A stretch of 63,834 nt of DNA, filler included, from Octopus bimaculoides (Eukaryota): NCBI RefSeq assembly GCF_001194135.2. It is 6 parts of 6 records of this genome, joined end to end, with 100 filler letters (N's around TTAATTAATTAA, not from the genome) between each part and the next. Parts side by side here need not be neighbours in the genome. Positions count along the whole stretch, not along the records: positions 16,944 to 36,551 come from NC_068981.1; 5 more parts are not named here. One strand, given 5' to 3'. Positions 16,944 through 36,551 of the stretch are shown here, piece after piece. Position 1 is the first letter of the stretch; each line of letters opens with the position of its first letter. The notes below the pieces were generated by a model. It saw only the letters and a program-made list of their open reading frames with translations, was not told where the DNA came from and did no database searches. Made by a program: the position numbers and the translations under genes.

Positions 16944-16978
<35 letters not shown>

Positions 16979-16980
16979 TG

Positions 16981-17016
<36 letters not shown>

Positions 17017-17240
17017 TGAATGTATGTATGTATGTATGAATGTATGTATGTATGTATGTATGTATGTATGTATGAATGTATGTATGTATGTATGAATGTA
17101 TGTATGTATGTATGTATGTATGTATGTATGTATGTGCTTGTATCTGTGTGTGTGTGATTGCGTGTGCGTGCTTGTGTATGTGTATGTTAAAAAATGAGAC
17201 AACAAAGCCAAGAAATTTATGAGACATTTATAAAGAGAAA

Positions 17241-17293
17241 GTTAGTTTTACAGCTGTTTCTGCGATATGAGAGATATCGCTTCATCAGAGACG
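17241..17293 (-). ncRNA. Type I hammerhead motif, canonical core
   Basis: CTGATGA (17288-17282); A; 7-bp GCGATAT/ATATCGC; A; GAAA; perfect palindrome ACAGCTGT; GUA triplet. Helix I is only partly paired. Confidence 0.75.
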
Positions 17294-17540
17294 ATATGAG
17301 TGAATTAAATAGAGGGAAATAGTAGAGTTCAATATAAGACGTTATTTTGGAGAGGGTGAGATATAGGAAGTAGAAAGGGAAATAAGAGAATGAAAATAGA
17401 AACATATGTTGGATACATATAGTGCGAAACAAGGACGGAAAAATACTACTCGAATACCGAAGGTAGATTAATGTACTTTATTACTAAAGGTGCAAAAACA
17501 TCATACAAATATTTAAAAAAAAACTAATTGTCTGAGAATC

Positions 17541-17586
17541 AAAACTGTCCGACGAACGGGAACATGAAACTCTGAGTACCAGATTC
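17541..17586 (+). ncRNA. Type I hammerhead motif, tandem copy 1
   Basis: AAAACTGT-CCGACGA-ACG/CAT-GAAA-CTC-T-GAG-TA; cleavage predicted after 17578. The 3' side of helix I is diverged. Confidence 0.7.
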
Positions 17587-17616
17587 CTATGATATTTTTG
17601 TGATATTTTTGCATCT

Positions 17617-17670
<54 letters not shown>

Positions 17671-17690
17671 TATATATATATATAGATATC

Positions 17691-17736
17691 AAAACTGTCC
17701 GATGAACGGGAACGTGAAACTCAGAGTAACGGTTTT
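17691..17736 (+). ncRNA. Type I hammerhead motif, tandem copy 2
   Basis: 8-bp helix I AAAACTGT/ACGGTTTT; CCGATGA; ACG-GGAA-CGT; GAAA; ACTC-A-GAGT; GUA; cleavage predicted after 17728. Confidence 0.85.
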
Positions 17737-18145
17737 TTTGTTATATTTCTGCTGCTTTTAAATAAAGTATATATNNNNNNNNNNNNNNNNNNNNNNNNNN
17801 NNNNNNNNNNNNNNNNNNNNNNNNNNNNNNNNNNNNNNNNNNNNNNNNNNNNNNNNNNNNNNNNNNNNNNNNNNNNNNNNNNNNNNNNNNNNNNNNNNNN
17901 NNNNNNNNNNNNNNNNNNNNNNNNNNNNNNNNNNNNNNNNNNNNNNNNNNNNNNNNNNNNNNNNNNNNNNNNNNNNNNNNNNNNNNNNNNNNNNNNNNNN
18001 NNNNNNNNNNNNNNNNNNNNNNNNNNNNNNNNNNNNNNNNNNNNNNNNNNNNNNNNNNNNNNNNNNNNNNNNNNNNNNNNNNNNNNNNNNNNNNNNNNNN
18101 NNNNNNNNNNNNNNNNNNNNNNNNNNNNNNNNNNNNNNNNNNNNN

Positions 18146-18206
<61 letters not shown>

Positions 18207-19179
18207 GCATGGATGGATGGTTATAGATATATATGTGTATATAAATATATGTATGTATGTATGCCTGTATGTATGTATGTATGTATGTATGTATGTATGC
18301 ATGCATGCATGTACGTATGTTTGTATGCATTTATTCAGGGCAGAAATATGTAGTAAAATAATTAATCTTTTGAAAGCAATAAGTTCTATACACATACAGT
18401 AAATATAAATTAAAGAACTTCTCGTGTCAGCCTGAGTTGCTCTTCATTATACATATTGTTCTTTGTGTGTTTTTCAAAATGAAATATGTTGTAAATTTCA
18501 TTAAAATCGGTTCAAAATTTCAAAATAAATCAGATGCAAAAACTGCAGCTTTGTAAATAATAATGGGTGTTATTCATATAAAAATATCTTACACCACATT
18601 TCATTAAATGATTGTATGATCAAGTTCCTGTATATTACTGGTATTAATTTTCTGTGAAGCCCAAGGGTTCGGAAAAGGGATACAGTTTTCTTGAGATAAT
18701 ATTGCAGAGTATAATTAAATGCAGTGTACGAGTCTTATTCTGTAGTTAAGAACTCTCTCTCTCACACTCACACATATATATACACTCACTCATACACTTA
18801 TATATGTACATATTTATGCTATAATTAATTTATGCATCAAATGAAATAGATGATTAGTTTGAATAAAATTATAACAAAATCCTAAAATTTAAACATAATA
18901 TACGTATCCTTTTATAAAACATTTCAAATGATGTATCTGATTTATATGTGAGTGGAAATACCTTTTAAATACTTTAAATTTTTGAAATTATATCACTGTT
19001 GTTGCCAAGATTTAATTGCCTCTGGAATTTAAGAAAACACTAGTATGCGTTAGAGATAAACAATGAAATTGTAAATCATAAAAAAGTAAATGACATTCCT
19101 TTATAAGATGAATATTTTTGAGTATATCGCAAATTGGAATTCACACTAAATGCAAGAAAGAAAATTATGCAAACTATTA

Positions 19180-20398
19180 TTAGGTCATCCCATAAATAAT
19201 GCGCTTTTAAATACTTGTTTTATTTTTCAAAATTCAGATAAACAAAGTTCTTTTTTAAGCTAAAATATACACTCCTTCATTTTCTACAATGCTCTTCCAT
19301 TTATCTGGTAGTCTTGTAAGACCTCTCTTCCAAAATTCACTTGTCCGTGACGGTAAATACTCCACCAGTACTGTTCTGACCGCATCTATAGAATTCATAT
19401 TTTTTCCCTCCAAATGATATTGAAGACTGCGGAATAAATAATAATCAGATGAGGAAATGTCCAGCGAATATGATGGGTGGGGTATCGTTTCCCATTTAAA
19501 CTAGTTCCAACTTTTGGAATGTCATCCTCGTTGTATGTGGCTGTGTATCATCCTGATGGAAGAACATCTTTCGTCTTGAAAACAAAGATGGTCATTTTTC
19601 TTCTAGTGCTGGCTTAAGCCGCTCAGTCTGTTCGCAGTAGATCCCCTTTGTTACCATTTGTTTTGGGTTTAAAAGTTCAAAGTGGACTAAACTTATTGTA
19701 TCCCATTAAACCAATAACAACAATTTACGTGGGCGAAGACCATCTTTAGCCTCGGGTGCTGGTGTTTCTCCTTTCCCTGCCGACTGGTTCGGCCCTTGAC
19801 ATTATTATAAAGAACCCATTTCTCGTCACCAGTCACTATTCGGTTCAAAAAAGGTTTATTCGTGAGACATGACAGCAAAGAAGAGCACACATTTACGCTC
19901 TGCGCGCGATTAGACTCGGACAGCATGTGAGGAACATATTGACCCAATTTGTTGACTTTTCCAATGGCACGCAAGGTGCCGATGAAATGTTGAATGACCA
20001 AATCCAAGCTTCTCTGCTAGTTCCTTAACAATTATGATGGGATTTTGTTCCATCAGAGATTGCATGACGTCCTCGTCGAACTCTACAGATCTTCTAGGAC
20101 GAGGCTCGTCTTCTAGGCTGTTGTTTCAGCCTCGAAATTTCTGGACCCACCATTGACACTGGCTTACGCTTATTGTCCGATACCCATATACTGCATTCCT
20201 CGCACTTTCCATTGGGTTAGCTTTGTAAAAAATAACTGTTACAATCGAACTGCATTCTTCAAAACTTATACTAACAATAAGCACAAGGTAAAATTGCTAC
20301 CAGTTTTTATAGCAAGCTGATGCAGGTAGCTTCTTCCGTCCCCCTCCGAATTTTACTTCGAATGATTGACAAAACCGCATTATTTATGGGATGACCAA
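19180..20398 (-). mobile_element. Full-length decayed mariner (DD34D-type) transposon
   Basis: ~28-bp TIRs TTAGGTCATCCCATAAATAATGCG / CGCATTATTTATGGGATGACCAA, 5' TA flank. Transposase remnants YVPHML, IVTGDEKWVLY, HPSYSLDISSSDYYLF. Confidence 0.9.
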
Positions 20399-21885
20399 CA
20401 TTTTCGTTAATAAATAATTTGAAAACAATTTTCATATTTTTGTTGATAGGTTTTGAAAATTTCCTATAGAAGCAGTACATTCCCTAATGCATTTCTAAGG
20501 CAAAAGAAAGGAATAATTTATGCTTATATTTCACTAGCTAATATTATTTTGAGAATTAGCAGATGATTAGAATTTTATTGTTTAAAGAATGTGCTCTAAC
20601 AAGAAGTGTTTAAAAATTACTTGTAATTAAAATTGTAGGAAATGAAGAGAGATGGAAATATGATAATGGACTGTGTTAGTATTATGCCTCATTATTTTCA
20701 TGAATTAACATCTCAAACATACTTGAATTTAAGCATAAATATAAGACATATAAACAAGGAAAAGTCAATATATTTTATAACAGCGGAGATATTTATGTGT
20801 GGAGTTTAAATGTTATCGCAACAAACAATACAAAGCCCAAAAGAGAAAATTATGTGAGGAAATAGATGGAAAATCAGAATTTATAATGCATTAATAGAAA
20901 TAACTTCTTTTAGATTAGAATTAGAAATATATATATGTTTCTACAATTAACAGGAAAGTTAAATTTGGTTTCCATTAGTTATTGGGAAGAAAACTGGGAA
21001 TGTGTAAAAGTATAATTTGTTGGTGTTTCGTAAAAAGAATGACTAATATGTCGTTGTCAGATTAGTATTAATTATGATTTGAGTTGGGAATACATTTAGA
21101 TTAAGCATTAAGATTAATGAAAATGAAGTACTTTAGTTAAAATGAAATTTAATAAAGACTCAGTATGCAAAATTAAGTGCTGAATCGTTTAATGATTGTA
21201 TAATAAAAACTTATTAAGTAGTATATATAAGTTTCCTTGAGTTAAACGTTTCTATGTTACCAATCAACTGTTATTAATAGAAATGTTACTACTGTTAGTT
21301 ACATGTGTAATGGTAAATGTGCCTTATATCTGAGTTAAAAACAAAAAGAAATTCTAAAATATGGAAATAATGGAGTAAAAAATAGTCACAAATTTATCAT
21401 TAACTCAATGACATTTCATAGCAATTTCGAAACAAATGCGTCTTCTAACGAGGTAATTCAATTACCAACAAATAGTTTTTGATGCTGATACCAGTAAAAT
21501 TAATAAACTTAGTGACATGGATTTATAGTTCTGGTACCGTTTCGTTAGTTGTTTTGTTCACATTTTCTGTATACGGATGACTGTTTCATTGGCTGAGTTT
21601 GCCTGTTAGGAGAGATAAAAAAAAAATATTGGTTAAAAATGATTTGAAGTTTATGTTTGTATGATGAAAGTAATTTTGAGTAACATTTAAGTTTTTGATG
21701 TTTAGATTTCAAACGATTCATAAGTGCGAAACTGACAAGGAGTTTTATTGGTAGTGTACAGTTTAGATGAAAAATTGTTTCCCCCCATTTTATATCAAAT
21801 GATGTTTCGACTTTAAATGTCAAGTATAATTGATCAGCGACTTTTCCGCTTTTCTATTTGGATGTCCAAAAGTATGTGTGTATGT

Positions 21886-21931
<46 letters not shown>

Positions 21932-22559
21932 ATACATATGTACGTATGCACGGATGTATGTTTATGTATGCACATAAGCATGCATACAAAGGTGCACACG
22001 CGTTTCGTGCTTTTTTACGAATGAATATATGTATATAGAGAGAGAGAGGTGAGGGCTGGAAACAACGCATTCTCTTTTGGTTTTTACTATCATCTTGATT
22101 ACTTTATATGGGCGTACATCCGTGCATACATATACATGCATGTGTGAATAAGCATATGTATGCATAAGCGTAGTTTTGTGCACCTGCACCCATTCGTGTA
22201 AGCATTAACTCCATTACATGTGTAGATTACATTGTTGTGCAATATGTTTAACATATTTTGACAGTGTCTTTCATAAATCGTCTCTTGATTAGGCAGGTTC
22301 TTTGTGGTTTTATTAAACCCAGCGTCTGCAGATTGCTACTGCGACTGTTACTGAAGTAACCGAAACCAGCAAGAATTATTGGTTAGAATCTAAATCTATA
22401 ATCGAGATGCAAAAACTGCTGTTTCTCAATAGTTCACCATTCAATCGGGAAAATGATTTCAAGTATTATGTATAATTGATTTTATCTATCATTTTGCATT
22501 TTGTATGTGTATATATGTATAATACTGTTCTATATTTTTGAGATGATGAATTCTGTACA

Positions 22560-22713
22560 TTATATACATTATTTACATTAGGCGGATGTGTCGTCATCTT
22601 TTTTGTGGTTATCACAAAGTTTCGGCTGATTTACTCTCCAGGTTTCATTAGGTGTCCTGGTAGAATTCTGAACCCAAACCTGCGTTCTCATTTCTAAGGT
22701 ATTTTTTGCTGAT
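22560..22713 (-). repeat. Short module with a degenerate minimal hammerhead next to (TAA)n
   Basis: Minus strand 22656-22611: GACAC-CTAATGA-AACCTG..CAGCC-GAAA-CTTT-GTGAT (G5>A, helix III decayed). Confidence 0.45.
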
Positions 22714-22714
22714 G

Positions 22715-22745
<31 letters not shown>

Positions 22746-22775
22746 CATTATTGTTGTTGTTGTTGTTGTTGTTAT

Positions 22776-23500
22776 TTTATGCTTGACTTTTGCTTTGCAT
22801 TTGTACAAGATGGCTCCGAGTCTCACCGAAAGACTTCAGGAGACAAATTAGAAATTCATGTTAGTGTTATGCCTAGGGTGCCATATATTTGGTTTTGTAC
22901 ATAGTATTGTTCTAGAGAATGTTTAAAGAACTATAAAATAATTATGAGTTTGTTTTAAGTTTTAAAATTTGAGATTACATAGACAGTATTTTACGTAGTA
23001 TATGGGCAGTTCCCATGAGCAATATCTTTTGAATTTCTGCGATTTTGGGATTACGTGGTATCTGAACTAGGTAGCAATCAGCTCCTTTTGCTATCATTCT
23101 TAGGGCACCTATGACAACAGGTATCGTTTTAGTCTTCAAGTTCCACATTTTACTAACTTCTATTTCAAGAGATTTATATTTGCTCAATTTTTGGTAGGTC
23201 TTGACAGATACGTTTATATCGATTGGGAGAGTCATATCAATGTGGAGGCATGAGTTTTGTCTGAAGTTTTTCACTATAATGTGTGGCCTATTCGCATCTT
23301 TCTTTCTGTCAGTTTCAATGTTGAAGTTCCAGAAGAGTGAGATGTGATCATTTTCAAGCACTGGAGAGGGTTTGTATTCCCACCAGATTTTATCATGGGG
23401 CATGTCCAGGCTTTTGCAAATTCCCCAGTGAATATATTGTGCTGCTATATCATGCCTGTTGAGAAGACTGCACATGGAGACAACATGATCAAGGGTCTCA
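22776..23500 (-). mobile_element. R4/Dong-type element 3' end: restriction-like endonuclease and 3' UTR
   Basis: ORF 22975-23475: RHD, LFWNFNIETD, ANRPHIIVK, IDMTLP, KLSKYKSLEIE, IPVVIGAL, GTAHILRKIL. The 3' end abuts an (AAC)n(AAT)n array. Confidence 0.9.
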
Positions 23501-23754
23501 NNNNNNNNNNTACTGTTAAAACGTGGTTTTTAAAAGGATGTACCTTCTTTTGAAATAGGATTTAGATGTTAAATTTCATTTAGATGTTAAATGTGATACT
23601 ATGAAGCAATTGCTTTCCAAACACAATCGTTAGTAATGACATAATGTTAATTATATCTAATAGCGTCTATGTTCTGTGTTTAGAGAGATTAAACTTTCTC
23701 ATATTAAATTATATGTAGTTTGCACAAAATGATGTGCAGTAATGTTACTTTTAC

Positions 23755-23764
23755 GTTATCATCA

Positions 23765-23816
<52 letters not shown>

Positions 23817-24770
23817 CATTATTATTGTTGTTGTTGTTGCTTTTGTTATTGTTACTACTATTTTCCTATACACACCACAGATTAGTCTGTTTGAAAAGAA
23901 AAAAAAATCCTGATATAGTGGTACAACAAATAACTTTAGATGCCAAGTACCCTCCTAAGTATCCTAACTGTCTCTAATAACAGTTTTATGCAGCTGCACT
24001 AAACTGGGTTTTATGCCTATTTCCTCTATCCATCTATCCAGATCATTAGGAATAGTTTCCAATGCCCCAATAACTACTGGGATACATTTTATCCGCACTT
24101 ACCATAGTCTCTGTAATTCTATGGCTAAGTCCTGGTAATTTGCTTTTTTTGTTTTTGTACATTTCACATATTGATCTTTTCATCGTTTGGGACTGTAAAG
24201 TCAATTATCTGGCACTTTAAATTCTCTTTATCTGCTACTGCTAAATCAAGCCTTCTAGCTTCTATTACTTTGTCAGTCTGAAAGTCTCACAACATATTGT
24301 ATTTCTTACTTTCTAATATTTTATTAGGTTCATATTCATATCATTTATTAGTATCTACATAACTCCCTAGCTATGTACATATGTTGTAATGTCTTTTCTT
24401 GCATTCTTTCTGTACCAGCATGCTACATTCACTATATGAGTAACGCTTTCCTCTTTTGATTTGCATAACCTACATTGGGAATCTACTTGGTTTTTTGGCT
24501 ATCTTGGCTTTTATCCAATTAGTCCTCAATGCTTGATCTTCTGCAGCTACTAACAAACTTTCTGTCTCTCTTTTTAGTTTTCCTTTCTGCAAATATAGCT
24601 ATGTTTCACTACTACAATTTGCTACAGATATCTTTGTAAATCTACCATGTAACGCCTAATCCTGCCAGTCAGGTAATTTCTGCTCTTTCTTCTGGTTTTT
24701 AACTTCATTTGGGTTTTTAGTTTTTCTCTATCTTGCTGTGGATCTATTACCTACATAGGAGTCTATATTA

Positions 24771-24831
<61 letters not shown>

Positions 24832-24844
24832 TTATTATCATCAT

Positions 24845-24904
<60 letters not shown>

Positions 24905-24960
24905 CTTTATCGTTGTTATTACAGTTATTATTCTCCAGACAATCTTTATTATTATTTAAT
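23755..24960. repeat. (TTA)n/(TTG)n array 23755-23860 and (TTA)n(CTA)n array 24768-24960 flanking an R4/Dong fragment
   Basis: Directly visible. Confidence 0.9.
23862..24765 (-). mobile_element. R4/Dong-type 3' fragment (zinc knuckle + endonuclease), decayed
   Basis: ETESLLVAAEDQALRTNWIKAKI, IPVVIGALETIP and RILRRVLGI* remnants; flanked on both sides by (TTA)n arrays. Confidence 0.8.
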
Positions 24961-24964
24961 ATAT

Positions 24965-25776
24965 GCACAAGTGATTAAAACTTAGATGTCAAGAACTTTC
25001 CTAAGTATCCTAGCTGTGCTAATAATATTGTTTCCTGGAGCTGTACTAAACAAGGTTTCATGCCTATTTCCTCTATCCATTTGTTTAAATATTTAGGGTT
25101 AGTTCTTAATGCACCAATAACTCTAGGGAACATTTTACCCTCATTTTTATAGCTTCCGTAACTCAATGGCAAGGTTCTGGTACTTTTCTATTTTTCTCTA
25201 TTCTGCTCATGTTGCATTTCCCATCATTTGAGACAATAAAGTCAATTATTTGGCACTTTCTTTTCTTTTAATCTTCTACAGATAAATGAGCCCTTTTGGT
25301 TACTATTACTCTGTCAGTTTCAATGTCAAAATCCCACATCATCTTATATTTCTTTCTTTCTAGTACTTTGCCAAGTTCATGTTCATATCATTTATCAGTA
25401 TGTTCATATCTCACCTTTCTACATAACACTCGGTGGATTATTCTCCCCAGACTGTCATGTCTTTTCTTGTGCTCTTTCTCTGCTAGCATTCACTTCCTAT
25501 ATGAGTAGCAGTTCCCTCTTTCGATTATTTATTTTTTTTTTCGTCTATCTTACCATTTATTAAATTACTCTTTAATTTTTTATGTCATGCTGCTACTAAC
25601 AAGCTTTTCAGCCTTCCTTTCAGCAAACATAACCATGTCTCACTATTACTATTTGCTGCAAGTATCCTTGGAAATTTGCTCTGCAAATCTGCTTGCCAAC
25701 CAGAATTTATCCTTATTTTTCGAGATTTTAACTTCATTTGGCTTTTTGGTTTCCCTATATTCTACTGTTACTCTAG
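24965..25776 (-). mobile_element. Second R4/Dong-type 3' fragment related to 23862-24765
   Basis: VIGALRTNPKYLNKWIEEIGMKPCLVQLQETILL; DNA similarity to the neighbouring copy. Confidence 0.75.
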
Positions 25777-26880
25777 CAGGACTGTGCAGCCAGAGACAAT
25801 ATGATTTATTGATTCTTCTCTACCTCCACATATATATTCTGCAGTTAGTTGTATTTCTTTTCATTACATGTTTTTGGTAAATTCTGGTGGGGAGGCTTTG
25901 TTCTTTTGCCGCAATTAAAAATCGTTCAGTCTCTGCTTTGAGTCCTAAGTTTCTCAGCCATTGTTGGAATTTTGCTTTTCTAATTCTTTTCTGATTAGTT
26001 TAACCCAGTATTTACCATGAATGGGCTTTTCTTGCCATCGTTTTATCCGTTGTTGTTCCAGTTTTAGTTTGGATTTCATTTGCTTTACAGCGTTTTTTGT
26101 TATTTTTTTTTCTTCATAGTTGTTAGTTACTATGACTTCTATATATTTTTTTTTTGTATTTGTCAGCTTCCTTAAAAGCTGGAAACAATATTTTGTTTTG
26201 TTCGTATTTTTTGGCTATTTGTATTAGTTTTCCTTGCTTCTGAAGTAGGTATTTTTGTAGTTCTATGGTGGCTATTTTGTAATAGTTTTCTAGTTGTATA
26301 TGGCTTCTACCACTTTCCATACGTTGTATATATAACAGATGTTTTCTCTTATTTTCTATTTTTTCTGAATTTTATATATCCGCAAGATTTGTTTCGGTGG
26401 TGATACTTCTGTTTGGATTGGCTTGAGGGGGTATCCAGACTCTTCTGTGCCCCCAGAGGCTGCTGCATATAGTATATCATTTAGCCTGGTCATATTGACA
26501 TTAATTTCTGTGGCTATTAGTTCTGTGACGGCTAGGTTCATGCTATTTATTAGTGATGTCGTTTTATTATCAACTTGAAGTTTTTGGAGGTACAATCGGT
26601 GGTCCATACTGAGACCTGTTGCTTTCAATTATTTATATTTATTTTTAGAGTATCATAATCATTAGTTTCACCTTCAATGCTTCCAGGACTTAGATTTGAT
26701 TTGATTCATGTTCCCTCCTGTTCATATTTTTGTCTGTGGTGTTCTGGTTTGGTGCATTTTGCTTATCATTATACATTCCTACGGTCTGAGTTTGTTGTAT
26801 TTCGTTATTTAGCTTTTGTTAGACATGTTACGTCTGTTTTTGTGCTTTACATTCCTAGTGCTTATATTATCTAGCATTTC
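25777..26880 (-). mobile_element. R4/Dong-type element of another family, internally deleted (no RT)
   Basis: N-terminal RLNDILYAAA..PPKQ joined to post-RT LYIQRMESGRS, WQEKPIHGKY, LKAETERFLIAAKEQ, EESINHIVSGC. Confidence 0.75.
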
Positions 26881-27046
26881 TGTCTGATGCATGTATGTAT
26901 GTATGTATGTATGTATGCAAACAGAAAGACAGCAAAGGCAGAAGACATTCAGATGAATATTTAAACATGAATATTATATAGATATTTATTCTAATAGATC
27001 AAACTTACACAAAGTACATATAAATATGTGTGTGTTTCTGTTCGTT

Positions 27047-27080
<34 letters not shown>

Positions 27081-28575
27081 CACACACACACACACACACA
27101 CACACANNNNNNNNNNNNNNNNNNNNNNNNNNNNNNNNNNNNNNNNNNNNNNNNNNNNNNNNNNNNNNNNNNNNNNNNNNNNNNNNNNNNNNNNNNNNNN
27201 NNNNNNNNNNNNNNNNNNNNNNNNNNNNNNNNNNNNNNNNNNNNNNNNNNNNNNNNNNNNNNNNNNNNNNNNNNNNNNNNNNNNNNNNNNNNNNNNNNNN
27301 NNNNNNNNNNNNNNNNNNNNNNNNNNNNNNNNNNNNNNNNNNNNNNNNNNNNNNNNNNNNNNNNNNNNNNNNNNNNNNNNNNNNNNNNNNNNNNNNNNNN
27401 NNNNNNNNNNNNNNNNNNNNNNNNNNNNNNNNNNNNNNNNNNNNNNNNNNNNNNNNNNNNNNNNNNNNNNNNNNNNNNNNNNNNNNNNNNNNNNNNNNNN
27501 NNNNNNNNNNNNNNNNNNNNNNNNNNNNNNNNNNNNNNNNNNNNNNNNNNNNNNNNNNNNNNNNNNNNNNNNNNNNNNNNNNNNNNNNNNNNNNNNNNNN
27601 NNNNNNNNNNNNNNNNNNNNNNNNNNNNNNNNNNNNNNNNNNNNNNNNNNNNNNNNNNNNNNNNNNNNNNNNNNNNNNNNNNNNNNNNNNNNNNNNNNNN
27701 NNNNNNNNNNNNNNNNNNNNNNNNNNNNNNNNNNNNNNNNNNNNNNNNNNNNNNNNNNNNNNNNNNNNNNNNNNNNNNNNNNNNNNNNNNNNNNNNNNNN
27801 NNNNNNNNNNNNNNNNNNNNNNNNNNNNNNNNNNNNNNNNNNNNNNNNNNNNNNNNNNNNNNNNNNNNNNNNNNNNNATATATATATATATATATATATA
27901 CATATATGTATGTATGTATGTATCTATGTATGCATATATCTTTATGGGAGCACGCGCGTGTGTATGGTCTCTAAGATTGAATTCAAAATAAATATTTGGC
28001 TAGTTTAGTAATGTAATACTGAACGTATACTTACATGCGTATGTGTTTGTATGTATGTGCACGCCCGAGTGTGCCTGTATGGACGTTGGCGCGTGCCTCT
28101 ATGTATGTGTGTGTAAGTTTGCTACTTTGTGTCGTTGTGTAGAATATTTATTTATATTTATTCTAACCAGAGAAAAAACTAAGACTCAAAAATATGGGTA
28201 TTGATTGATGTTGATGCTGTTGTCGCGGTTACTGTTTCCACTGAGGGTGTTGTTGCCGTCGCAGTTGTTGTTATCCATTGGCCCCAATAAGCCTTGTTTG
28301 AGTAAAATCATTGTCAGACGCATCCATTTCAGACGTGATCTTCCAATTTATTTCTTAAATTCAAGGAAAGCAGGAATACCTTGTATAACGTCTCGTTTTT
28401 GAATAATAGCAAAAAGTGATTCAAAGACGATTTGCCGCTATTTCTAACACAGACGTAGTCTATTAACGTTGTCTGCCTCCATGCGCAACGTAAGATTAGT
28501 TGCATGCTGTTTTGTATTTGTTTATAGTCTAATTGACTTGTTTGTGAATGCGCACGCATGTGTTTGTGTGTGTGT

Positions 28576-28606
<31 letters not shown>

Positions 28607-28869
28607 CAGCAAGTTTAGTAGCCTGAACAGGACTTACATAATCCACATTAAACCTAATGTATTGACAATACTTTAATGTTGATTCTTAATGTTAGCCCAG
28701 TTCGATCGTTCGTTATGTGCTATTAATTCGTTTATGCACCATTTTATTTATTTACTTATTGCAATTTGCATATATTTTGAATCTTATATATTTGTCATGT
28801 TATAATTTTTAGCAGTTTGTTGTCATGTGTGTAAGCCGTGTTTATTATTATTATTATTATTTTTCACTG

Positions 28870-29400
28870 TGAGGTTTGGTTGTATGTGATAATCTTTGGT
28901 GTTTCTGGTAACAGGGTAGATTAAGGAGATGAATAATTAAATTTGTTGCGTGTGATCCGGGATTTTTTGTGATTATATTCGATTTGGAGTAGTTGTTAGC
29001 CACGTCTGGAATATCATGCGGTTATGTAACTATGACATCATTTGCATATTTGGCTGTGATTGATTTGTATAGATATGAGATCTTTATAATTTAAAAATCC
29101 TGGATCTCACAAACGACTCGGATTATAGTCGTGTCTATTCAGAGAAATGCAAATTTTTAAATGCGTTATTGCAGTATACAGTTATGCATAATTATGTGAC
29201 TAATAGCTTGATAAATAGTGCTTAATATGGATATCAAAGGATATGGTTGGCATTTGTATATGACTGGTTACTGGAAAGAGGAGGTGTCGTTTGCTGATAT
29301 AGAGGATAATATATTGATGCTGAGATAAATTAGTGATGTTGATAAGGCGTTGGAGACAATAACACACGGTATTTTTTCTGATTCTTTGCAAATCCTAACG
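28870..29400 (-). mobile_element. Very decayed LINE reverse-transcriptase remnant
   Basis: NTVCYCLQRLIN, PTISFDIHI and TAKYANDVIV (YADD-like) occur in RT order; weak. Confidence 0.35.
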
Positions 29401-30460
29401 TGACATATGACCAACTTTTTCTTTCGTAATCAATAAAAAATAAACAAACTAGGAACTCTGGATTGGAGATACTCTTAAAGCATCGAGTTCGATGCTTTGT
29501 AATGTCTGTTCTTTTCCTTTATATCATGAAATCAGTACGTGCGACAACACTGCTACTAAGTTATATCGATCATAAAACGCCTGTTTTCCCTTGGACAAAA
29601 TCGGTTGCATGTGCGCTGGGATGAAACCTCGTTGAAAAAGCAACTAACGATTTAAGAAGAAACAACCAAAGTTTGCCCGGACTACGCATGTAACTGCATA
29701 CACATGATCAAACCTGACCGAAGGCGGCTTTTATAAGAATGGTTCGTTGAATAAAGAGTTAATCCAAGTTGTCAGAAACAGAAAGGAATGTATACGCAAT
29801 GCTATGTACTGTCATTCTTATATTTTTGAAAGTACACATACGAAAGTGATGTTTAAATGTGACGCTGATGCAGTTTCGTTTTACGATTATGATGATTTTG
29901 CAGTTTCAGAAAATGGGGAATCAATGGTGTTGATACAAGCATTTGAAGATTCTAATAAGTGCAAGGAGTCTTCTCGGCTCTAATTTGGTTTAGGATTTGG
30001 TTTAGGATTGTTTCATTACTCTCTGCTGTGTTTCATTTATTTATTTTCATGGAAGGAAGGAAGGAAGGAAGGAAGGAAGGAAGGAAGGAAGGAAGGAAGG
30101 AAGGANNNNNNNNNNNNNNNNNNNNNNNNNNNNNNNNNNNNNNNNNNNNNNNNNNNNNNNNNNNNNNNNNNNNNNNNNNNNNNNNNNNNNNNNNNNNNNN
30201 NNNNNNNNNNNNNNNNNNNNNNNNNNNNNNNNNNNNNNNNNNNNNNNNNNNNNNNNNNNNNNNNNNNNNNNNNNNNNNNNNNNNNNNNNNNNNNNNNNNN
30301 NNNNNNNNNNNNNNNNNNNNNNNNNNNNNNNNNNNNNNNNNNNNNNNNNNNNNNNNNNNNNNNNNNNNNNNNNNNNNNNNNNNNNNNNNNNNNNNNNNNN
30401 NNNNNNNNNNNNNNNNNNNNNNNNNNNNNNNNNNNNNNNNNNNNNNNNNNNNNNNNNNNN

Positions 30461-30535
<75 letters not shown>

Positions 30536-30659
30536 GGTGTTAATGTAAGATTAAGTAAGTTTGTGAAGTTGTATATAAAAAAAAATGTTTAATACATTTA
30601 ATACAAAGAACGTACATATGTATTCATATGAAAGAAGTCCGACTTACAGAGAATGGAAA

Positions 30660-32230
30660 AGATATCAGGAATTAAGGGTTGAGTACATTTTTCCGAGTCC
30701 CAAAGTTTTTTTCTTGGAACTTGGTGATCCAAAATGATGCTTGTAACTTGATTCCATCATCGGATGCCACCAACCTTCGTCTTCAGGGAAGAATTCTATA
30801 TTTGAGGTGTTGACAGAATGGAGATTAAAGAAGGAATGATTTTGTGGAGAACTAAGCGTATTGGAAAGAGGAGTTGGTGGTGTTTAGATAGAGAGTAGTG
30901 GGAGGAGAAAATAGATCTTGGAGTTACGGTTAATAATGAGGCGAGTGATAGTAGAAGTGGAAGGTGTGAGGAAGGGAGAGTGTAGTTTAAGTAGTACGTG
31001 AAAGATAAACTTTGTGTTAGTTTGCATGGAGTCTATAGAGTTAAAGGTTCGGATAGAGAAACAGGGATGGTTATTTGAGTGAAATGAGTTGACTGGTTCA
31101 GTAGCTGGGGGTGAGAAGGTGGTCAAAAGTATTCGTTATTAGTTCAAAGGAATTGGGAGGGTATTGAATGGGTGGGGTGGGGAGTTATGGTAAATAGAGG
31201 AGTTTGGGATTGAATAGAGGGGTGTGAGTAGGGAGGAGATAAAGGTAGATTGGTCAGTGTTCAAAGGAGTGGCGTATTGTTATGTACTTTTTGAAACTGG
31301 GGAGGGTGGGGAAGCTAAGAGGGAAGTGTGACGTAGTTGATTTGAAGAAAGTGGAAGAAACTGGAGATGTATGTATGAGAGAGAGTAGAAGGCGCTAGAG
31401 TAGTATTTTCTAACTAGTGGATTGCAGGGCTGAGTTTGTCTTGTTTTAAGGTGTTTTGAGGTATGAAAACTTGTTATGAGATTATATGGATTTGGTGAAG
31501 TGCGTGACAGATGAGTAGAACCTATGTCTACAAGAATAAATAACATGAGAGAATTTATGAAGTAATGAGGCGTTATAAAGGCGAGGATTGGTTAATGATT
31601 CTTTTAGACATAATTTACAATTGCCGATGTTTGCAAGTATGGTGAAGACTCGCATACTGCGGACCAGGATTGGGTGTAAGAAATATTTTGGTATTTGAGG
31701 TGGTATATATACGTTGCCAAGGCGGTTGACAATTTAGTATTTGGATTGGCGAAAGATTTCGTGAGTATACGGTAGCGGCGCTTGAAATCTACAGTGCCAC
31801 CGATATATATAACCTTGCTTGATGGGAGCGTAGTGTTAATGCACTGCATAGATTATATTTATGCGCGGACAAGAGCTTCCAATAGGGCGTAATTGAGATA
31901 CATGACAATTAAAAATTTCGTACCAGCTCCGTGATTGGGACTTTGTACAAGCGAGGTTGAGCTCAGTTGGTTCATTAAGTGGGGGAGAACCAGAAGTGTG
32001 ATCTACATTTGCATTGGATTGGGAGGTGGTATTGCAGCTAGTATTTGTTGTCGCGTAGGTAGGATTGAAGAATGATTGCTTGAATCTAATATTATTTGAG
32101 GGGCTTTTATTAAGGGCTGTGTTATTGCTACTATCTGGGTTAACATGGGGTGCAGTATGAGAATTTAGGTGTTCGGAGGATTGATGTTGGAGTTTGCATT
32201 TCTTTCAAGAGACGATTATGGATCCTAAAT
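30660..32230 (-). mobile_element. Penelope-like element fragment: GIY-YIG endonuclease plus long C/T-rich 3' tail
   Basis: IYIGGTVDFKRRY..SF..STALATYIYHLK..WS..SSPY then CLKE..SCRH, the typical PLE endonuclease C-terminus. Confidence 0.75.
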
Positions 32231-32419
32231 TAGTTCTCCAATTCTCTGTAAATCAGACTTCTTTTGTATTAATAAATATGTACATTCTTTGTGTTAAACG
32301 TATTTAACATTTTTTTATATATCAAATTGACTAAGTATTTTGTCTTTACATTTACTCCTCTATCTGGTCATGTTCAAATCTCTTGTGCACCACGAAGTAT
32401 CTTCTATACAGAGAATACC

Positions 32420-32681
32420 TGTCTCATGGCCGTGTGGTAAGCAGCTTGTTTACCATCCACATGGTTCTGGGTTCAGTCTTCTCCTATAGCCTCGGGCCGA
32501 CCAAGACCTTGTGAGTGGATTTGGTAGTCGGGAACTGAAATTAGTCCGTCGTATTCTTTCTGTTGAAGAGCGTAGCTCGAAACGTCAAAGACTTTCCGTA
32601 TTCCCGAGCGTCATACTAATATATACTTTTGTTATTTACACCACCTGTCCTCGTCTGTTGTTATTTTTTGTATATTCTCCC

Positions 32682-32738
<57 letters not shown>

Positions 32739-32945
32739 TATGTATGTATGTATGTATGTATGTTTGTGTCTGTGTCTGTGATTGTCCCCTCACCATCGCT
32801 TGAAAACCGATGCTGGTGTAGTTACGTTCCCGTAACTAGCGGTTCGGCAAAAGAGACCGATTGAATAATTACTAGGCTTACAAAGAATAAGTCCTGGCGT
32901 CGATTTGTTCGACTAAAGGCGGTGCTCCAGGATGGCCGCAGTCAA
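32420..32945 (+). mobile_element. SINE family A with a nested hammerhead module
   Basis: Head and tail match 2561 and 49266; a foreign segment occupies 32553-32682. Confidence 0.8.
32555..32592 (+). ncRNA. Minimal hammerhead motif with a 3-nt insertion in the core
   Basis: TCTTT/AAAGA helix I; CTG[TTG]AAGA; G-CGTAGCT-C; GAAACGTC (GUC triplet). Confidence 0.65.
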
Positions 32946-33059
32946 TTTTTATATATAAATATATAAACAAGCACACACACACACAGATATAAATATACAT
33001 ACAATTAGATATAAATCAGTTACTGTTGTGTTTAGTGTAGTACGTAAATATTTCATCAT

Positions 33060-33600
33060 TCAGTCTGCTTTCTGTATTGAATAACTTCTATTGTGAGTTG
33101 TACTATGTAATTTTTTTCTATTTTTCTGGGCATTTTTTCTATCTTGTACTTCGAGCTTCAAGTTGGCACTGGTTTTTACTAGGTTGGATATTTTAGTTAG
33201 ATAATTAAGGTGGTATTTTGAATTTAACTTTTTGAGATAGGTCTTTTGAAATCCTATGGGATAACTTTGTTTCAATGAATGTACTGCAGAATCGATTTTG
33301 GTGGTTCCATTGTTGTTGATTTCTGAGAATTTTATTTCTGTCTCTTGGTAAAAGATATTCCACTGGGCAATTTAATTTTTTTGTAAGTTTTGAAAATGCT
33401 TTGATTTTGTTTATTGATGTATTAATATAGTAAAATTTTGATAGACAAGTTGTGGAAGGGAGGTGAGCTGGCGTATTGTTTATTGTATGCTCATGGTGAA
33501 TAAGTGAGTGCAGTAGAGAGTGATCTCTAGAGAGCAAGATTTCTTTTGTTTGCTTCTTGAGTTACCTTAGTGAGATTTTCGTTATATTTTGTTTTGGAGT
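33060..33600 (-). mobile_element. Possible N-terminal region of the Penelope-like ORF
   Basis: Overlapping Lys/Asn-rich frames including LKQSYPIGF, same strand as and upstream of the GIY-YIG fragment; motif support is weak. Confidence 0.3.
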
Positions 33601-34478
33601 GGTGAGGGCAGTGGTGGTTATTACAGACTTCGATGTTTCAATTATCGTATTACTGTATCAAATCTATCATTCGAAAACTTTTTGTGTTATGTGCATTTGA
33701 TAAAGTGTTAAGTTATAGTAGCTGAGACATCCATCAAAGTAGAGGCAAAATGCATTTTGACAAAATGTACAGCTTATATTATTATCGTTTTATAAAATTC
33801 TATATTGTATATTACTATAAGTAAACTTCAGGTTAGTTAAAATTTGTTTGCGACACATTTCAATTGCTACAAAGCAGATTCAATGCAGTTACACTGGGGA
33901 AAATTATTTCACTTATTATAGAAAGGTATAAAAACACTATTAATGTATTACTGATTATCAGAAAGTAAGCGATAATATGGGAAGCGACTGTGGTGACCTT
34001 AAGTGCAGGCTATATTAGAGACATATGATAGCCTCGTAATACTATAAACTTCAACTGAAATTAATCGAATATTTTCAGAAGAGAATCAAATCTTTGAAAG
34101 CAGAGAACTGAAATGGGTTTATAAATAGAATCAGTTCTACTTTCCACTCTATGGTATATGTTTTTATTTGATTCCTTTTGCTAGTATTACTTATATATAG
34201 GTGTGTTCAATTAGTATTCAAGTGTTGTTCTCAGTATTCAAAGTTGATGGAATAGTTAATGTATACTAACAGACTGATGTTGGATCTTTAAATATNNNNN
34301 NNNNNNNNNNNNNNNNNNNNNNNNNNNNNNNNNNNNNNNNNNNNNNNNNNNNNNNNNNNNNNNNNNNNNNNNNNNNNNNNNNNNNNNNNNNNNNNNNNNN
34401 NNNNNNNNNNNNNNNNNNNNNNNNNNNNNNNNNNNNNNNNNNNNNNNNNNNNNNNNNNNNNNNNNNNNNNNNNNNNNN

Positions 34479-34533
<55 letters not shown>

Positions 34534-35547
34534 CAAACAAACATATACATATTAGATAATGTACACATACATAAAATTGCAGCACACAAATACATATGAA
34601 TAACCAGAAATACAATCGGCTCAAGAAACTCTTTGATTTTCACATAAATTCTGGTTGGGCGTTCTCAGGTTTATACATAGTATATGTTTTATTTATTTCA
34701 GAGTTACTACCTTCTCGGCAAAGAGCATAAACTCGAGATATGAACGATAATCTTAATTCCATTTCTTGAACTTCAATCTATTAACAACAACGTTTTTACT
34801 TGTTTTTCATGTTCCTTTTACTTTGTCGTCAACTTTGCACACGTATGTATGTGTGTGGGGGGTACGCGTGTATGTGCGTGCGTGTGTGCTGTGTGTCTTC
34901 ATATGTGTGTATTTGTGTGTGTCTGCGTGAGTATATGTGTGAGCGTGTGAGAAAGAAGATATCGGTAAATTTAACTATTTATCTCTNNNNNNNNNNNNNN
35001 NNNNNNNNNNNNNNNNNNNNNNNNNNNNNNNNNNNNNNNNNNNNNNNNNNNNNNNNNNNNNNNNNNNNNNNNNNNNNNNNNNNNNNNNNNNNNNNNNNNN
35101 NNNNNNNNNNNNNNNNNNNNNNNNNNNNNNNNNNNNNNNNNNNNNNNNNNNNNNNNNNNNNNNNNNNNNNNNNNNNNNNNNNNNNNNNNNNNNNNNNNNN
35201 NNNNNNNNNNNNNNNNNNNNNNNNNNNNNNNNNNNNNNNNNNNNNNNNNNNNNNNNNNNNNNNNNNNNNNNNNNNNNNNNNNNNNNNNNNNNNNNNNNNN
35301 NNNNNNNNNNNNNNNNNNNNNNNNNNNNNNNNNNNNNNNNNNNNNNNNNNNNNNNNNNNNNNNNNNNNNNNNNNNNNNNNNNNNNNNNNNNNNNNNNNNN
35401 NNNNNNNNNNNNNNNNNNNNNNNNNNNNNNNNNNNNNNNNNNNNNNNNNNNNNNNNNNNNNNNNNNNNNNNNNNNNNNNNNNNNNNNNNNNNNNNNNNNN
35501 NNNNNNNNNNNNNNNNNNNNNNNNNNNNNNNNNNNNNNNNNNNNNNN

Positions 35548-35580
<33 letters not shown>

Positions 35581-35732
35581 TATATTATGTATGCAAATAT
35601 TTATATGCCCATCCATATATACATATACATATATCTTCTTGTCAAAATTTACCCTGAACACTTTGTATGTGTGCGAGTGTTTGTATGTCTTTGTGTGTGT
35701 GTGCCTGTATGTCTGTGTGTTCGTGTGTTCAC

Positions 35733-35765
<33 letters not shown>

Positions 35766-36519
35766 CGTGCGTACATATATATCACTCATTCAACATACCT
35801 TCACACTCACTATTTCACTCTCTTCTGGGTATTTCAACTTCACTCATTCTCTTCATTCCCTCTCTCTTTCTTTTACTTTTTGTCTTTCTTTATATCCACC
35901 ATTTCTCTAACATCCAAAGAATAATGTGTCAGTATTTGATTTTTTCAAAGAAAAAAACATGAAAGCATATGGCTCAAAATCTTTGAAACAACAAAGTAAG
36001 ATCAAATCTTTTGGGGGAAATATAAAAACAAACAACAAAGGAACAAACAAACAATAAAAAACAAACAGACATCTTCATCAACAATCTGAAGAAGAAAAAA
36101 TGTGCCTGCTCATAATTTAAATCATATACTTCTTCACACACAAACGTATACACACCTACTCAGAAACTTAAATAATCTTTGACACGTACAAACAGGCTTA
36201 TTCTCCAAGGCACACAAAATAACTTACTCAACAACGTACACGTAGAGATGCAAACTTACATATATAATCTGCAATATATCCGGAAGCAAATGAGAGAACA
36301 TTCGCCTACAAAACATAGCAATCTAATCATTCTCTGATCAGCCATACTGCCGTTTAATATGTTCTATGGCATAGTGTCTTTCAATGAACAGTATCACCGT
36401 ATCACAATAAAGGTATAGAGAGGGGTATGTTATTTCTAGACCGCATTTAATCATATACCTTTTCAATGAGGATTAATCTAGGGCTAAACAATATAACACA
36501 CCATATATATATATATATA

Positions 36520-36551
<32 letters not shown>

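What the first reader, a model, noticed from the sequence alone, without database searches (positions are those of the whole stretch)
17541..17736. Tandem hammerheads 150 nt apart around (TAA)n with mutually complementary helix-III strands: candidate microsatellite retrozyme
Seen: two copies with predicted cleavage after 17578 and 17728, exactly 150 nt apart, and a spacer that is largely (TAA)n(TA)n. Helix III is ACTC-T-GAGT in copy 1 and ACTC-A-GAGT in copy 2. A 1-nt loop cannot close in a monomer and each homodimer would carry a central mismatch, but the two strands are exact reverse complements and form a perfect 9-bp heterodimer helix. In the dimer, the helix I 5' strand of copy 1 (identical to that of copy 2) pairs with ACGGTTTT, favouring cleavage at 17728. 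Inference: double cleavage would release a 150-nt UAA-repeat RNA that could circularise, and more units may lie in the gap at 17775-18145.
Basis: partly seen in the sequence, partly recalled or inferred. Interest (0 to 1): 0.85.

Follow-up and report, generated by a model that had tools for sequence, protein, structure and literature searches.

The report
Hammerhead-like retroelement fragments beside a microsatellite
Two close copies, plus a third inverted partial copy, of a short octopus repeat carry a hammerhead-ribozyme-like motif with a weakened catalytic core. They look like decaying ends of a Penelope-like or retrozyme-type mobile element beside a TAA/TA microsatellite, a kind already known in invertebrates, not like a new "microsatellite retrozyme".

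Summary
Two homologous 41-nt motifs (17538-17578 and 17688-17728, + strand, 38/41 identical) parse as type-I hammerheads with predicted cleavage after 17578 and 17728. Their helix-III strands, ACUCUGAGU and ACUCAGAGU, are exact reverse complements. Copy 2 fits a relaxed hammerhead descriptor at a chance rate of about 0.003 per piece.

- Both copies have C instead of U at core position 4.
- The 10.1-11.1 pair is A-U, and helix II has only 3 bp.
- Copy 1 also has a broken helix II and a poor helix I (5 of 8 pairs).
- No Rfam family matches, even at E<=10.

A third copy lies head-to-head with copy 1 (17537 to 17466, minus strand). It is inverted and truncated at its 5' end. It carries the A-type helix III, so the T in copy 1 is probably a single private substitution, not a designed T/A alternation.

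(TAA)17 grows out of the element's own AATAA tail. The hypothetical 150-nt circle is 20% GC and poorly structured.

Best reading: a nest of 3'-terminal fragments of a hammerhead-bearing, PLE/non-LTR-retrozyme-type retroelement in an octopus genome. Ribozyme activity, family consensus and transcription could not be tested, because no octopus genome DNA was reachable.

The parts
17541..17586 (+). Copy 1 of the hammerhead-like motif. Core is CCGACGA (C4). Helix II has a C x A mismatch. Helix III is ACUC-U-GAGU. The predicted cleavage site is after 17578. Helix I keeps 5 of 8 pairs.
17691..17736 (+). Copy 2 of the hammerhead-like motif. Core is CCGAUGA (C4). Helix II is intact at 3 bp with a GGAA loop. 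Helix III is ACUC-A-GAGU. The predicted cleavage site is after 17728. Helix I has 8 bp, including one G.U pair.
17579..17626 (+). 3' tail of copy 1. It has three 11-nt units (CCAGATTCCTA, TGATATTTTTG, TGATATTTTTG) followed by CATCTTTAATAA. It forms the right arm of the inverted repeat.
17729..17770 (+). 3' tail of copy 2. It has two 11-12-nt units followed by CTGCTTTTAAATAAAGTATATAT, and it runs into the N gap.
17618..17689 (.). (TAA)17.7 followed by (AT)11. The microsatellite grows out of the AATAA end of tail 1 and forms most of the 150-nt spacing.
17466..17537 (-). Third copy, inverted and truncated at its 5' end. It contains the helix III remnant CTCAGAC, AA, the helix I 3' strand TTAGTTTT, three 11-nt units, and the tail end AATAAAGTACAT. 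It abuts copy 1 head-to-head. Homology is firm for 17478-17512; the extension into helix III (17513-17537) is not significant on its own.
   Evidence: 35 nt at 86%, E=3e-6; score 45 vs 17.5 +/- 3.1, 0 of 1000 shuffles; (73-75% identity over 56-64 aligned nt; extension p=0.03 vs copy 2, n.s. vs copy 1)
17775..18145 (.). Assembly gap (N), flanked by (TA)n on the left and (TAGA)n on the right. Its content is unknown.

Best explanation
The locus is a small nest of 3'-terminal fragments of one retroelement family in an octopus genome. There are two direct copies and one inverted, 5'-truncated copy. The family carries a type-I, dimer-type hammerhead-like motif about 40-50 nt from its 3' end. This is the arrangement described for Penelope-like elements (PLEs) and their non-autonomous derivatives, the non-LTR retrozymes.

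Inferred mechanism for the ancestral element: the hammerhead cut the element's transcript after GAGUA. Its helix III was short and near-palindromic (ACUC-A-GAGU), and its helix I was perfect (AAAACUGU with NCAGUUUU). It probably worked best when two copies paired through helix III, as proposed for PLE hammerheads. Copies then integrated into or beside TA-rich microsatellites, or beside earlier copies, which produces tandem and inverted partial copies.

The present copies look weak or dead. Both have C4. Copy 1 has also lost helix II and much of helix I. The 150-nt spacing is mostly (TAA)n(TA)n that expanded from the element's AATAA/TA tail.

Shown here: the sequence anatomy, the three-copy architecture, the chance statistics and the predicted pairings. 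Inferred: the ribozyme ancestry, the PLE or retrozyme affiliation, and the loss of activity.
For: - Hammerhead architecture beyond chance: copy 2 fits the descriptor at about 0.003 chance hits per piece.
- Across the three copies, the consensus helix I 3' strand is NCAGTTTT, a perfect partner for AAAACTGT.
- The third, inverted copy abuts copy 1. Tandem plus inverted partial copies, a 30-40-bp tail, hammerheads near the 3' end and (TA)n targets are PLE hallmarks (PMC8557442).
- PLE and metazoan type-I hammerheads have short palindromic helix III and act as dimers (PMC4209133; PMC6765202).
- Retrozyme consensus lengths of 51-972 bp have been reported, and most families have at most seven repeat units (bioRxiv 10.64898/2026.07.22.740005).
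- Octopus genomes carry PLE families (PMC13282606). The window is octopus, because the LINE ORF's best hits are O. bimaculoides proteins at 76-84% identity.
- Two more hammerhead-like motifs, unrelated in sequence, lie in the same 19.6 kb. One sits about 65 nt from a microsatellite on the opposite strand.
- A U4C hammerhead is a known natural variant with reduced in vitro activity (PMC3088659).
Against: - No Rfam hammerhead model matches, even at E<=10.
- Position 4 is C and 10.1-11.1 is A-U, so the motif fails the published CUGANGA descriptors.
- No PLE reverse transcriptase or GIY-YIG ORF is recognisable in the piece.
- No other family member could be retrieved from any collection. The consensus and copy number of the family are therefore unknown.
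- The extension of the inverted copy into helix III is a short match (6 of 7 in register). On its own it is not significant.
- The long inverted repeat would also fit a MITE or foldback element.
Confidence: 0.55

Rival explanations
1. One reading: an active dimeric 'microsatellite retrozyme'. The two copies pair through a perfect 9-bp heterodimeric helix III. Both sites are cut, and a 150-nt UAA-rich RNA is released and circularised.
For: - The helix III strands are exact reverse complements. The heteroduplex scores -12.5 kcal/mol against -7.9 and -7.4 for the homoduplexes.
- The inter-copy helix III and the outer helix I dominate the predicted ensemble.
- A 150-bp unit and a dimer array are within the range reported for non-LTR retrozymes.
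- U4C hammerheads can work in vivo.
Against: - Each composite active site carries C4 plus a second defect: copy 1's helix II C x A mismatch, or copy 1's helix I with 5 of 8 pairs.
- The inverted third copy has A at the helix III centre, so T/A is most simply one substitution.
- The (TAA)n tract is a tail expansion that the other two copies lack.
- The predicted circle is 35% paired with z = +2.1, unlike rod-like retrozyme circles.
- There is no further unit upstream.
Confidence: 0.07
2. A chance look-alike. The unit is a MITE or foldback-type DNA element, or simply a local palindrome, whose loop happens to resemble a hammerhead. It has no ribozyme ancestry.
For: - A significant inverted repeat flanks the catalytic part of copy 1. 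The firm core is 35 nt, and the alignment may extend to about 70 nt.
- There is no Rfam hit.
- The motif departs from consensus at position 4 and at 10.1-11.1, and helix II has only 3 bp.
- At about 0.003 chance hits per 17 kb, a 2.7-Gb genome would hold hundreds of chance hits under the relaxed descriptor.
Against: - Copy 2 far exceeds the descriptor thresholds, with 8-bp helix I and 4-bp helix III. No shuffle out of 400 reached those values.
- The three-copy consensus improves helix I to a perfect duplex.
- The right arm of the 'inverted repeat' is the same 3' tail that follows copy 2, which has no left arm. The arms are therefore copies of an element end, not terminal inverted repeats of one element.
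Confidence: 0.15
3. The 3' ends of a non-autonomous element mobilised by a LINE with a microsatellite tail (Dong/R4-like), not by a PLE. The stem-loops near the 3' end would serve as the reverse transcriptase's recognition structure, and any hammerhead likeness would be secondary.
For: - Three tandem LINE 3' ends on the minus strand each end in (CAA)n or (GTA)n followed by (TAA)n.
- The LINE ORF has zf-RVT-bearing relatives.
- Dong-R4 LINEs are the most numerous recently active LINEs in O. vulgaris.
- From memory, not tested here: Dong-type elements target (TAA)n.
Against: - The family's tail shows no similarity to the 3' UTRs of those LINE copies.
- Only copy 1 is followed by (TAA)n. Copy 2 and the inverted copy end in AATAAAGTA(C/T)AT.
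- An inverted copy of the same 3' end is more typical of PLE insertions than of LINE twin priming. This point is an inference.
Confidence: 0.18

Closest known systems
Minimal or dimer-type type-I hammerheads of Penelope-like elements (Cervera & de la Pena 2014, PMC4209133; Lunse, Weinberg & Breaker 2017, cited in PMC6765202)
   Same: - Type-I topology, with a short palindromic helix III that favours an inter-copy (dimeric) helix.
- No loop-loop tertiary contacts.
- Location near an element's 3' end.
- Tandem and opposite-strand partial copies.
- Association with (TA)n.
   Different: - The core reads CCGANGA (C4), not CUGANGA.
- 10.1-11.1 is A-U, not the conserved G-C.
- Helix II is 3 bp, not 6-8 bp.
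- There is no clear bulged nucleotide after A9.
- The helix III palindrome has an odd centre.
- No PLE ORF lies nearby.
Metazoan non-LTR retrozymes (Cervera & de la Pena 2020, PMC7229834; Li, Clavereau & Pollet 2026, bioRxiv 10.64898/2026.07.22.740005)
   Same: - Tandem units that each carry a type-I hammerhead.
- Low GC.
- Unit length within the reported range (about 150-400 bp; consensus lengths 51-972 bp).
   Different: - There are only two units, and they diverge outside the 41-nt core.
- Half of the unit is a pure microsatellite.
- The predicted circle is poorly structured, not highly self-paired.
- No expression or cleavage data exist.
Double hammerheads of newt satellite 2 and ASBVd (Forster et al. 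1988, cited)
   Same: A weak helix III in the monomer. Two tandem copies can form a long shared helix III and two composite active sites.
   Different: Those dimers pair identical even-length palindromes (homodimers) and have consensus cores. Here a perfect helix needs two different copies, and both cores are variant.
Natural U4C hammerhead variant of a viroid (discussed in Perreault et al. 2011, PMC3088659)
   Same: The same core substitution. It shows that C4 need not abolish biological function.
   Different: That variant sits in a hammerhead stabilised by tertiary contacts within a replicating RNA. Here the helices are minimal and no tertiary contacts are evident.

Membership tests
Hammerhead ribozyme, type I (Rfam Hammerhead_1 and relatives) | Conserved core boxes C3-U4-G5-A6-N7-G8-A9 and G12-A13-A14 | tested here: not met
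   GAAA is present. The first box reads CCGACGA and CCGAUGA, so position 4 is C in both copies.
Hammerhead ribozyme, type I (Rfam Hammerhead_1 and relatives) | Three helices around the core, an A15.1-U16.1 pair, cleavage after H17 (not G), and an open helix I | tested here: met
   Copy 2 has helix I of 8 bp, helix II of 3 bp, helix III ACUC/GAGU, and A17. Copy 1 meets this only partly, with a C x A mismatch in helix II and 5 of 8 pairs in helix I.
Hammerhead ribozyme, type I (Rfam Hammerhead_1 and relatives) | Match to the curated covariance model | tested here: not met
   No hammerhead hit at gathering score or at E<=10, on a 375-nt search or on the whole piece.
Hammerhead ribozyme, type I (Rfam Hammerhead_1 and relatives) | Site-specific self-cleavage | not testable with these tools
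   This needs in vitro transcription. The explicit hammerhead fold of copy 2 scores -4.7 kcal/mol, against an MFE of -8.4 for another fold.
PLE-type minimal / dimeric hammerhead | Short, palindromic helix III / loop 3 that allows an inter-copy helix | tested here: met
   ACUC-N-GAGU. The heteroduplex is 9 bp at -12.5 kcal/mol. The homoduplexes are 4+4 bp with a central mismatch, at -7.9 and -7.4.
PLE-type minimal / dimeric hammerhead | Conserved G10.1-C11.1 pair, an unpaired nucleotide between A9 and 10.1, and a long helix II (6-8 bp) | tested here: not met
   10.1-11.1 is A-U, helix II has 3 bp, and no bulge is needed. The defining features are as listed in PMC4209133.
PLE-type minimal / dimeric hammerhead | Location in the pseudo-LTR of an element that encodes a reverse transcriptase and a GIY-YIG endonuclease | tested here: inconclusive
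   No such ORF is recognisable in 19.6 kb. Most genomic PLE hammerheads are reported as dispersed or truncated copies. The tandem and inverted partial-copy architecture beside (TA)n fits a PLE.
Non-LTR retrozyme | Head-to-tail tandem repeats, each unit carrying a type-I hammerhead | tested here: inconclusive
   Two units lie 150 nt apart. The region between the tail and the next hammerhead is microsatellite in one unit and unique sequence upstream of the other. There is no third direct unit. The gap at 17775-18145 is unreadable.
Non-LTR retrozyme | The monomer RNA forms a stable, highly self-paired circle | tested here: not met
   The circular fold of 17579-17728 has MFE -5.3 kcal/mol, is 35% paired, and has z = +2.1 against 300 shuffles. 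The criterion comes from PMC7761336.
Non-LTR retrozyme | Expression as linear and circular RNA of unit length | not testable with these tools
   No octopus transcriptome or genome data were reachable.

The most novel reading that the evidence does not exclude
Octopus genomes might hold an undescribed family of very small (about 80-150 nt) PLE-dependent retrozymes. Their hammerhead would use a CCGANGA (C4) core and an odd-length helix III palindrome, so full activity would require pairing between two sequence variants (A-type with T-type). They would shed AU-rich, microsatellite-bearing circular RNAs.
Probability: 0.06. Interest if true: 0.6.

Novelty: new member of a known kind. Interest (0 to 1): 0.3.

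Why it matters
If the family proves abundant and keeps C4 in its consensus, it would add a cephalopod lineage and a tolerated core variant to the catalogue of retroelement hammerheads. It would also show a class of motifs that Rfam models and CUGANGA descriptors both miss. The locus also illustrates how a microsatellite can grow out of a retroelement tail. As it stands, this is an ordinary decayed repeat of a kind that is already well described.

Tried and rejected
1. Rfam at gathering score and at E<=10 gave only microsatellite noise (mir-297 and similar) and no hammerhead.
2. Exact-pattern scans with GAYGAACGGGAACRTGAAAC found 18 metagenome loci, 6 prokaryote genome loci and 0 viral loci. 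All hits are chance matches inside GC-rich coding DNA, without the flanking motif.
3. I searched the protein database with concatenated six-frame peptides of the element, hoping to pull ORFs called on octopus contigs. There were no hits.
4. I tried to reach octopus genomic DNA through the LINE ORF and the mariner relic. The Octopus proteins are UniRef-only, with no contigs. The ENA contigs fetched (L025, L026) come from unidentified ENA assemblies (ERZ accessions) and share only about 65% nucleotide identity with the LINE. They hold no copy of the motif, and an 18-nt match at L025:11588 has no core.
5. A possible 'copy 0' about 142-150 nt upstream was rejected. Its alignment scores are below the shuffle mean.
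6. A second CCGATGA box at 30763 (-) does not have hammerhead layout.
7. The ORF at 31607-31852 (-) has a 'YIGGT' string that suggested a PLE GIY-YIG domain. Neither NCBIfam nor PDB sequences support this.
8. Tail sharing with the neighbouring (TAA)n-tailed LINE copies was tested and no similarity was found.
9. Two of the three substitutions between the copies fall on unconstrained positions (N7 and the helix III centre). By my own estimate this is not significant (P about 0.15), so no case for selection can be made.

Full report
**Context**

The piece 16944-36551 is eukaryotic. It is 33% GC, is full of microsatellites and has several N gaps. It also contains:
- A decayed mariner transposase.
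- Three tandem LINE 3' ends on the minus strand.

The best protein relatives of the LINE ORF are Octopus bimaculoides sequences at 76-84% identity. The window therefore comes from an octopus genome.

**The observation**

Two 41-nt blocks, 17538-17578 and 17688-17728 on the + strand, are 38/41 identical. They are the only matches to the motif in the piece, against an expectation of 0.00 from shuffles. Each block parses as a type-I hammerhead:
- Helix I 5' strand AAAACUGU.
- Core CCGA(C/U)GA.
- Helix II ACG-GGAA-C(A/G)U.
- GAAA.
- Helix III ACUC-(U/A)-GAGU.
- A17.

The two helix III 9-mers are exact reverse complements. The heteroduplex is predicted at -12.5 kcal/mol, against -7.9 and -7.4 for the homoduplexes with their central mismatch. 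In a 17541-17736 transcript the inter-copy helix III has probability about 1.0. The pairing of the copy 1 5' strand with ACGGUUUU has probability about 0.9.

**Is it more than chance?**

I wrote a type-I descriptor allowing <=1 core mismatch and requiring helix I >=5, helix II >=3 and helix III >=3 bp.
- It finds copy 2 and nothing else in the piece.
- It gave 21 hits in 8000 dinucleotide-preserving shuffles, about 0.003 per piece. With an exact core it gave 1 hit in 8000.
- No shuffle out of 400 reached copy 2's actual values of helix I 8 bp and helix III 4 bp.

The hammerhead likeness is therefore unlikely to be accidental in this window. At genome scale, however, the relaxed descriptor would still give hundreds of chance hits.

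- Both copies have C at core position 4, where the consensus is U.
- The 10.1-11.1 pair is A-U, and helix II has only 3 bp.
- Copy 1 has a C x A mismatch in helix II (17564 A against 17714 G). Its helix I 3' strand CCAGAUUC keeps 5 of 8 pairs.
- Copy 1 fails the descriptor.
- No Rfam family matches, at gathering score or at E<=10.
- As monomers, neither copy folds into the hammerhead as its MFE, and the z-scores are about +0.4.

U4C is a documented natural variant. It lowers activity in vitro considerably, yet it supports viroid infectivity (PMC3088659). C4 therefore weakens the case for activity without ruling it out.

In a double hammerhead, the site that cuts at 17728 borrows copy 1's catalytic half, with its broken helix II. 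The site that cuts at 17578 uses copy 1's poor helix I strand. The heterodimer does not rescue the defects.

**A third copy changes the picture**

The sequence after the cleavage site is homologous in both copies. It is built of 11-nt units (TGATATTTTTG-like) and ends in CTTT(A)AATAA.

The same tail occurs a third time, inverted, immediately upstream of copy 1.
- 17478-17512 is 86% complementary to 17592-17626 (E = 3e-6).
- The alignment score is 45, against 17.5 +/- 3.1 for shuffles, with 0 of 1000 shuffles reaching it.

Read on the minus strand from 17537 to 17466, this copy aligns at 73-75% identity over 56-64 positions with the direct copies. The alignment runs from helix III through the tail end:
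- CTCAGAC, where the direct copies have CTC(A/T)GAG.
- AA, where the direct copies have UA at 16.1 and 17.
- TTAGTTTT, the helix I 3' strand.
- Three 11-nt units.
- AATAAAGTACAT, the tail end.

The extension into helix III is short, at 6 of 7 matches in register. It is not significant on its own, so I treat it as probable rather than proven.

Three consequences follow:
1. In family orientation the helix III centre is A in two copies and T in one. The T of copy 1 is most simply a private substitution, not one half of a designed complementary pair.
2. The consensus helix I 3' strand is NCAGTTTT, a perfect partner for AAAACTGT. The ancestral element therefore had a better hammerhead than either surviving copy.
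3. Copy 2 and the inverted copy both end AATAAAGTA(C/T)AT. Copy 1 instead has AATAA followed by (TAA)17(TA)11. The microsatellite is thus an expansion of the element's tail, and it makes up most of the 150-nt spacing.

**Test of the retrozyme reading**

The 150-nt RNA that double cleavage would release (17579-17728) is 20% GC. As a circle it folds to only -5.3 kcal/mol with 35% of bases paired, which is worse than its own shuffles (z = +2.1). Described retrozyme circles are stable and highly self-paired (PMC7761336).

There is no further unit upstream, and the gap at 17775-18145 cannot be read. On the other hand, a 150-bp unit and an array of only two units are within the range reported for animal non-LTR retrozymes.

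**What it most likely is**

The locus combines:
- A type-I hammerhead-like motif with a short, near-palindromic helix III, about 40-50 nt from an element's 3' end.
- Tandem plus inverted 5'-truncated partial copies.
- A position beside TA-rich microsatellite.

This matches the published picture of Penelope-like elements and their non-autonomous derivatives:
- PLEs show hammerheads near the 3' end, complex tandem and inverted insertions, a 30-40-bp tail and (TA)n targets (PMC8557442).
- Their minimal hammerheads act as dimers and cleave poorly in vitro (PMC4209133; PMC6765202).
- Retrozymes appear to derive from PLE pseudo-LTRs.
- Octopus genomes contain PLE families (PMC13282606).

The same 19.6 kb holds two more hammerhead-like motifs of unrelated sequence.
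- One is on the minus strand at 17296-17240, about 65 nt from the (TATG)n/(TG)n tract. It has exact core boxes, a 7-bp helix II and a palindromic ACAGCUGU helix III. Its expected number by chance is 0.01.
- The other is at 32552-32594, with a minimal-hammerhead layout and an A6U change. Its expected number by chance is 0.003.

Such relics therefore seem common in this genome.

**Limits**

- I could not obtain any other member of the family. The pattern scans of metagenome, prokaryote-genome and viral collections gave only chance hits. A six-frame peptide search gave nothing. No octopus contigs were reachable.
- No PLE ORF is recognisable in the piece.
- The family consensus (notably position 4), the copy number, transcription and cleavage all remain untested.

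**Rivals**

- A MITE or foldback element with a chance hammerhead look-alike.
- A non-autonomous partner of the (TAA)n-tailed LINEs seen at 22.6-26.3 kb. Its tail shows no similarity to theirs.

**Verdict**

This is a new but ordinary member of a known kind: decayed retroelement-associated dimer-type hammerheads. It has one point of modest interest, the shared C4 core.

Noticed in passing
window 17240-17296, minus strand: A second hammerhead-like motif, unrelated in sequence: CGUCU-CUGAUGA-A-GCGAUAU-CUCUC-AUAUCGC-A-GAAA-C-AGCU-G-UA|AAACUAAC. The core boxes are exact, helix II has 7 bp, and helix III (ACAGCUGU) is palindromic. There is an extra A before G12, and helix I is weak (4 of 7 pairs). 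On its strand it lies about 65 nt from the (TATG)n/(TG)n tract. The expected number by chance is 0.01 per piece (0 of 1000 shuffles at its actual helix sizes).
   Followed up: partly
window 32552-32594, plus strand (within 32420-32660): A minimal-hammerhead layout: UAUUCUUU-CUGUUGA-A-GAGC-GUA-GCUC-GAAA-CG-UC|AAAGACUU. It has a bulged A after position 9, a G10.1-C11.1 pair, an ACGU palindrome and a 5-bp helix I, but an A6U core change. The expected number by chance is 0.003 per piece. It sits in what looks like a tRNA-derived SINE body (GGTTCTGGGTTCAGTC box). That reading is from memory only, because ARAGORN and Rfam gave nothing.
   Followed up: partly
window 22600-26300, minus strand: Three tandem 5'-truncated LINE 3' ends at about 1040-bp spacing. 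They carry the reverse transcriptase C-terminus ORF (for example 22975-23475), whose relatives carry zf-RVT. Each is followed by a short 3' UTR and a (CAA)n or (GTA)n plus (TAA)n tail. TAA microsatellites in this genome are often retroposon tails or targets.
   Followed up: partly
window 19258-20216, minus strand: A decayed mariner (DD34D, Mos1/SETMAR-like) transposase with several frameshifts and stops. Its best relatives are 49% identical and carry PF17906 and PF01359.
   Followed up: partly
protein P0049: A UniRef entry labelled Escherichia coli is 73% identical to the octopus LINE fragment. This looks like contamination or mislabelling in the source database.
   Followed up: no
window 17579-17611 and 17729-17751; minus strand 17523-17491: The element's tail is built of 11-nt units (TGATATTTTTG-like). 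There are three units in copy 1 and in the inverted copy, and two in copy 2. The first unit doubles as the helix I 3' strand.
   Followed up: yes
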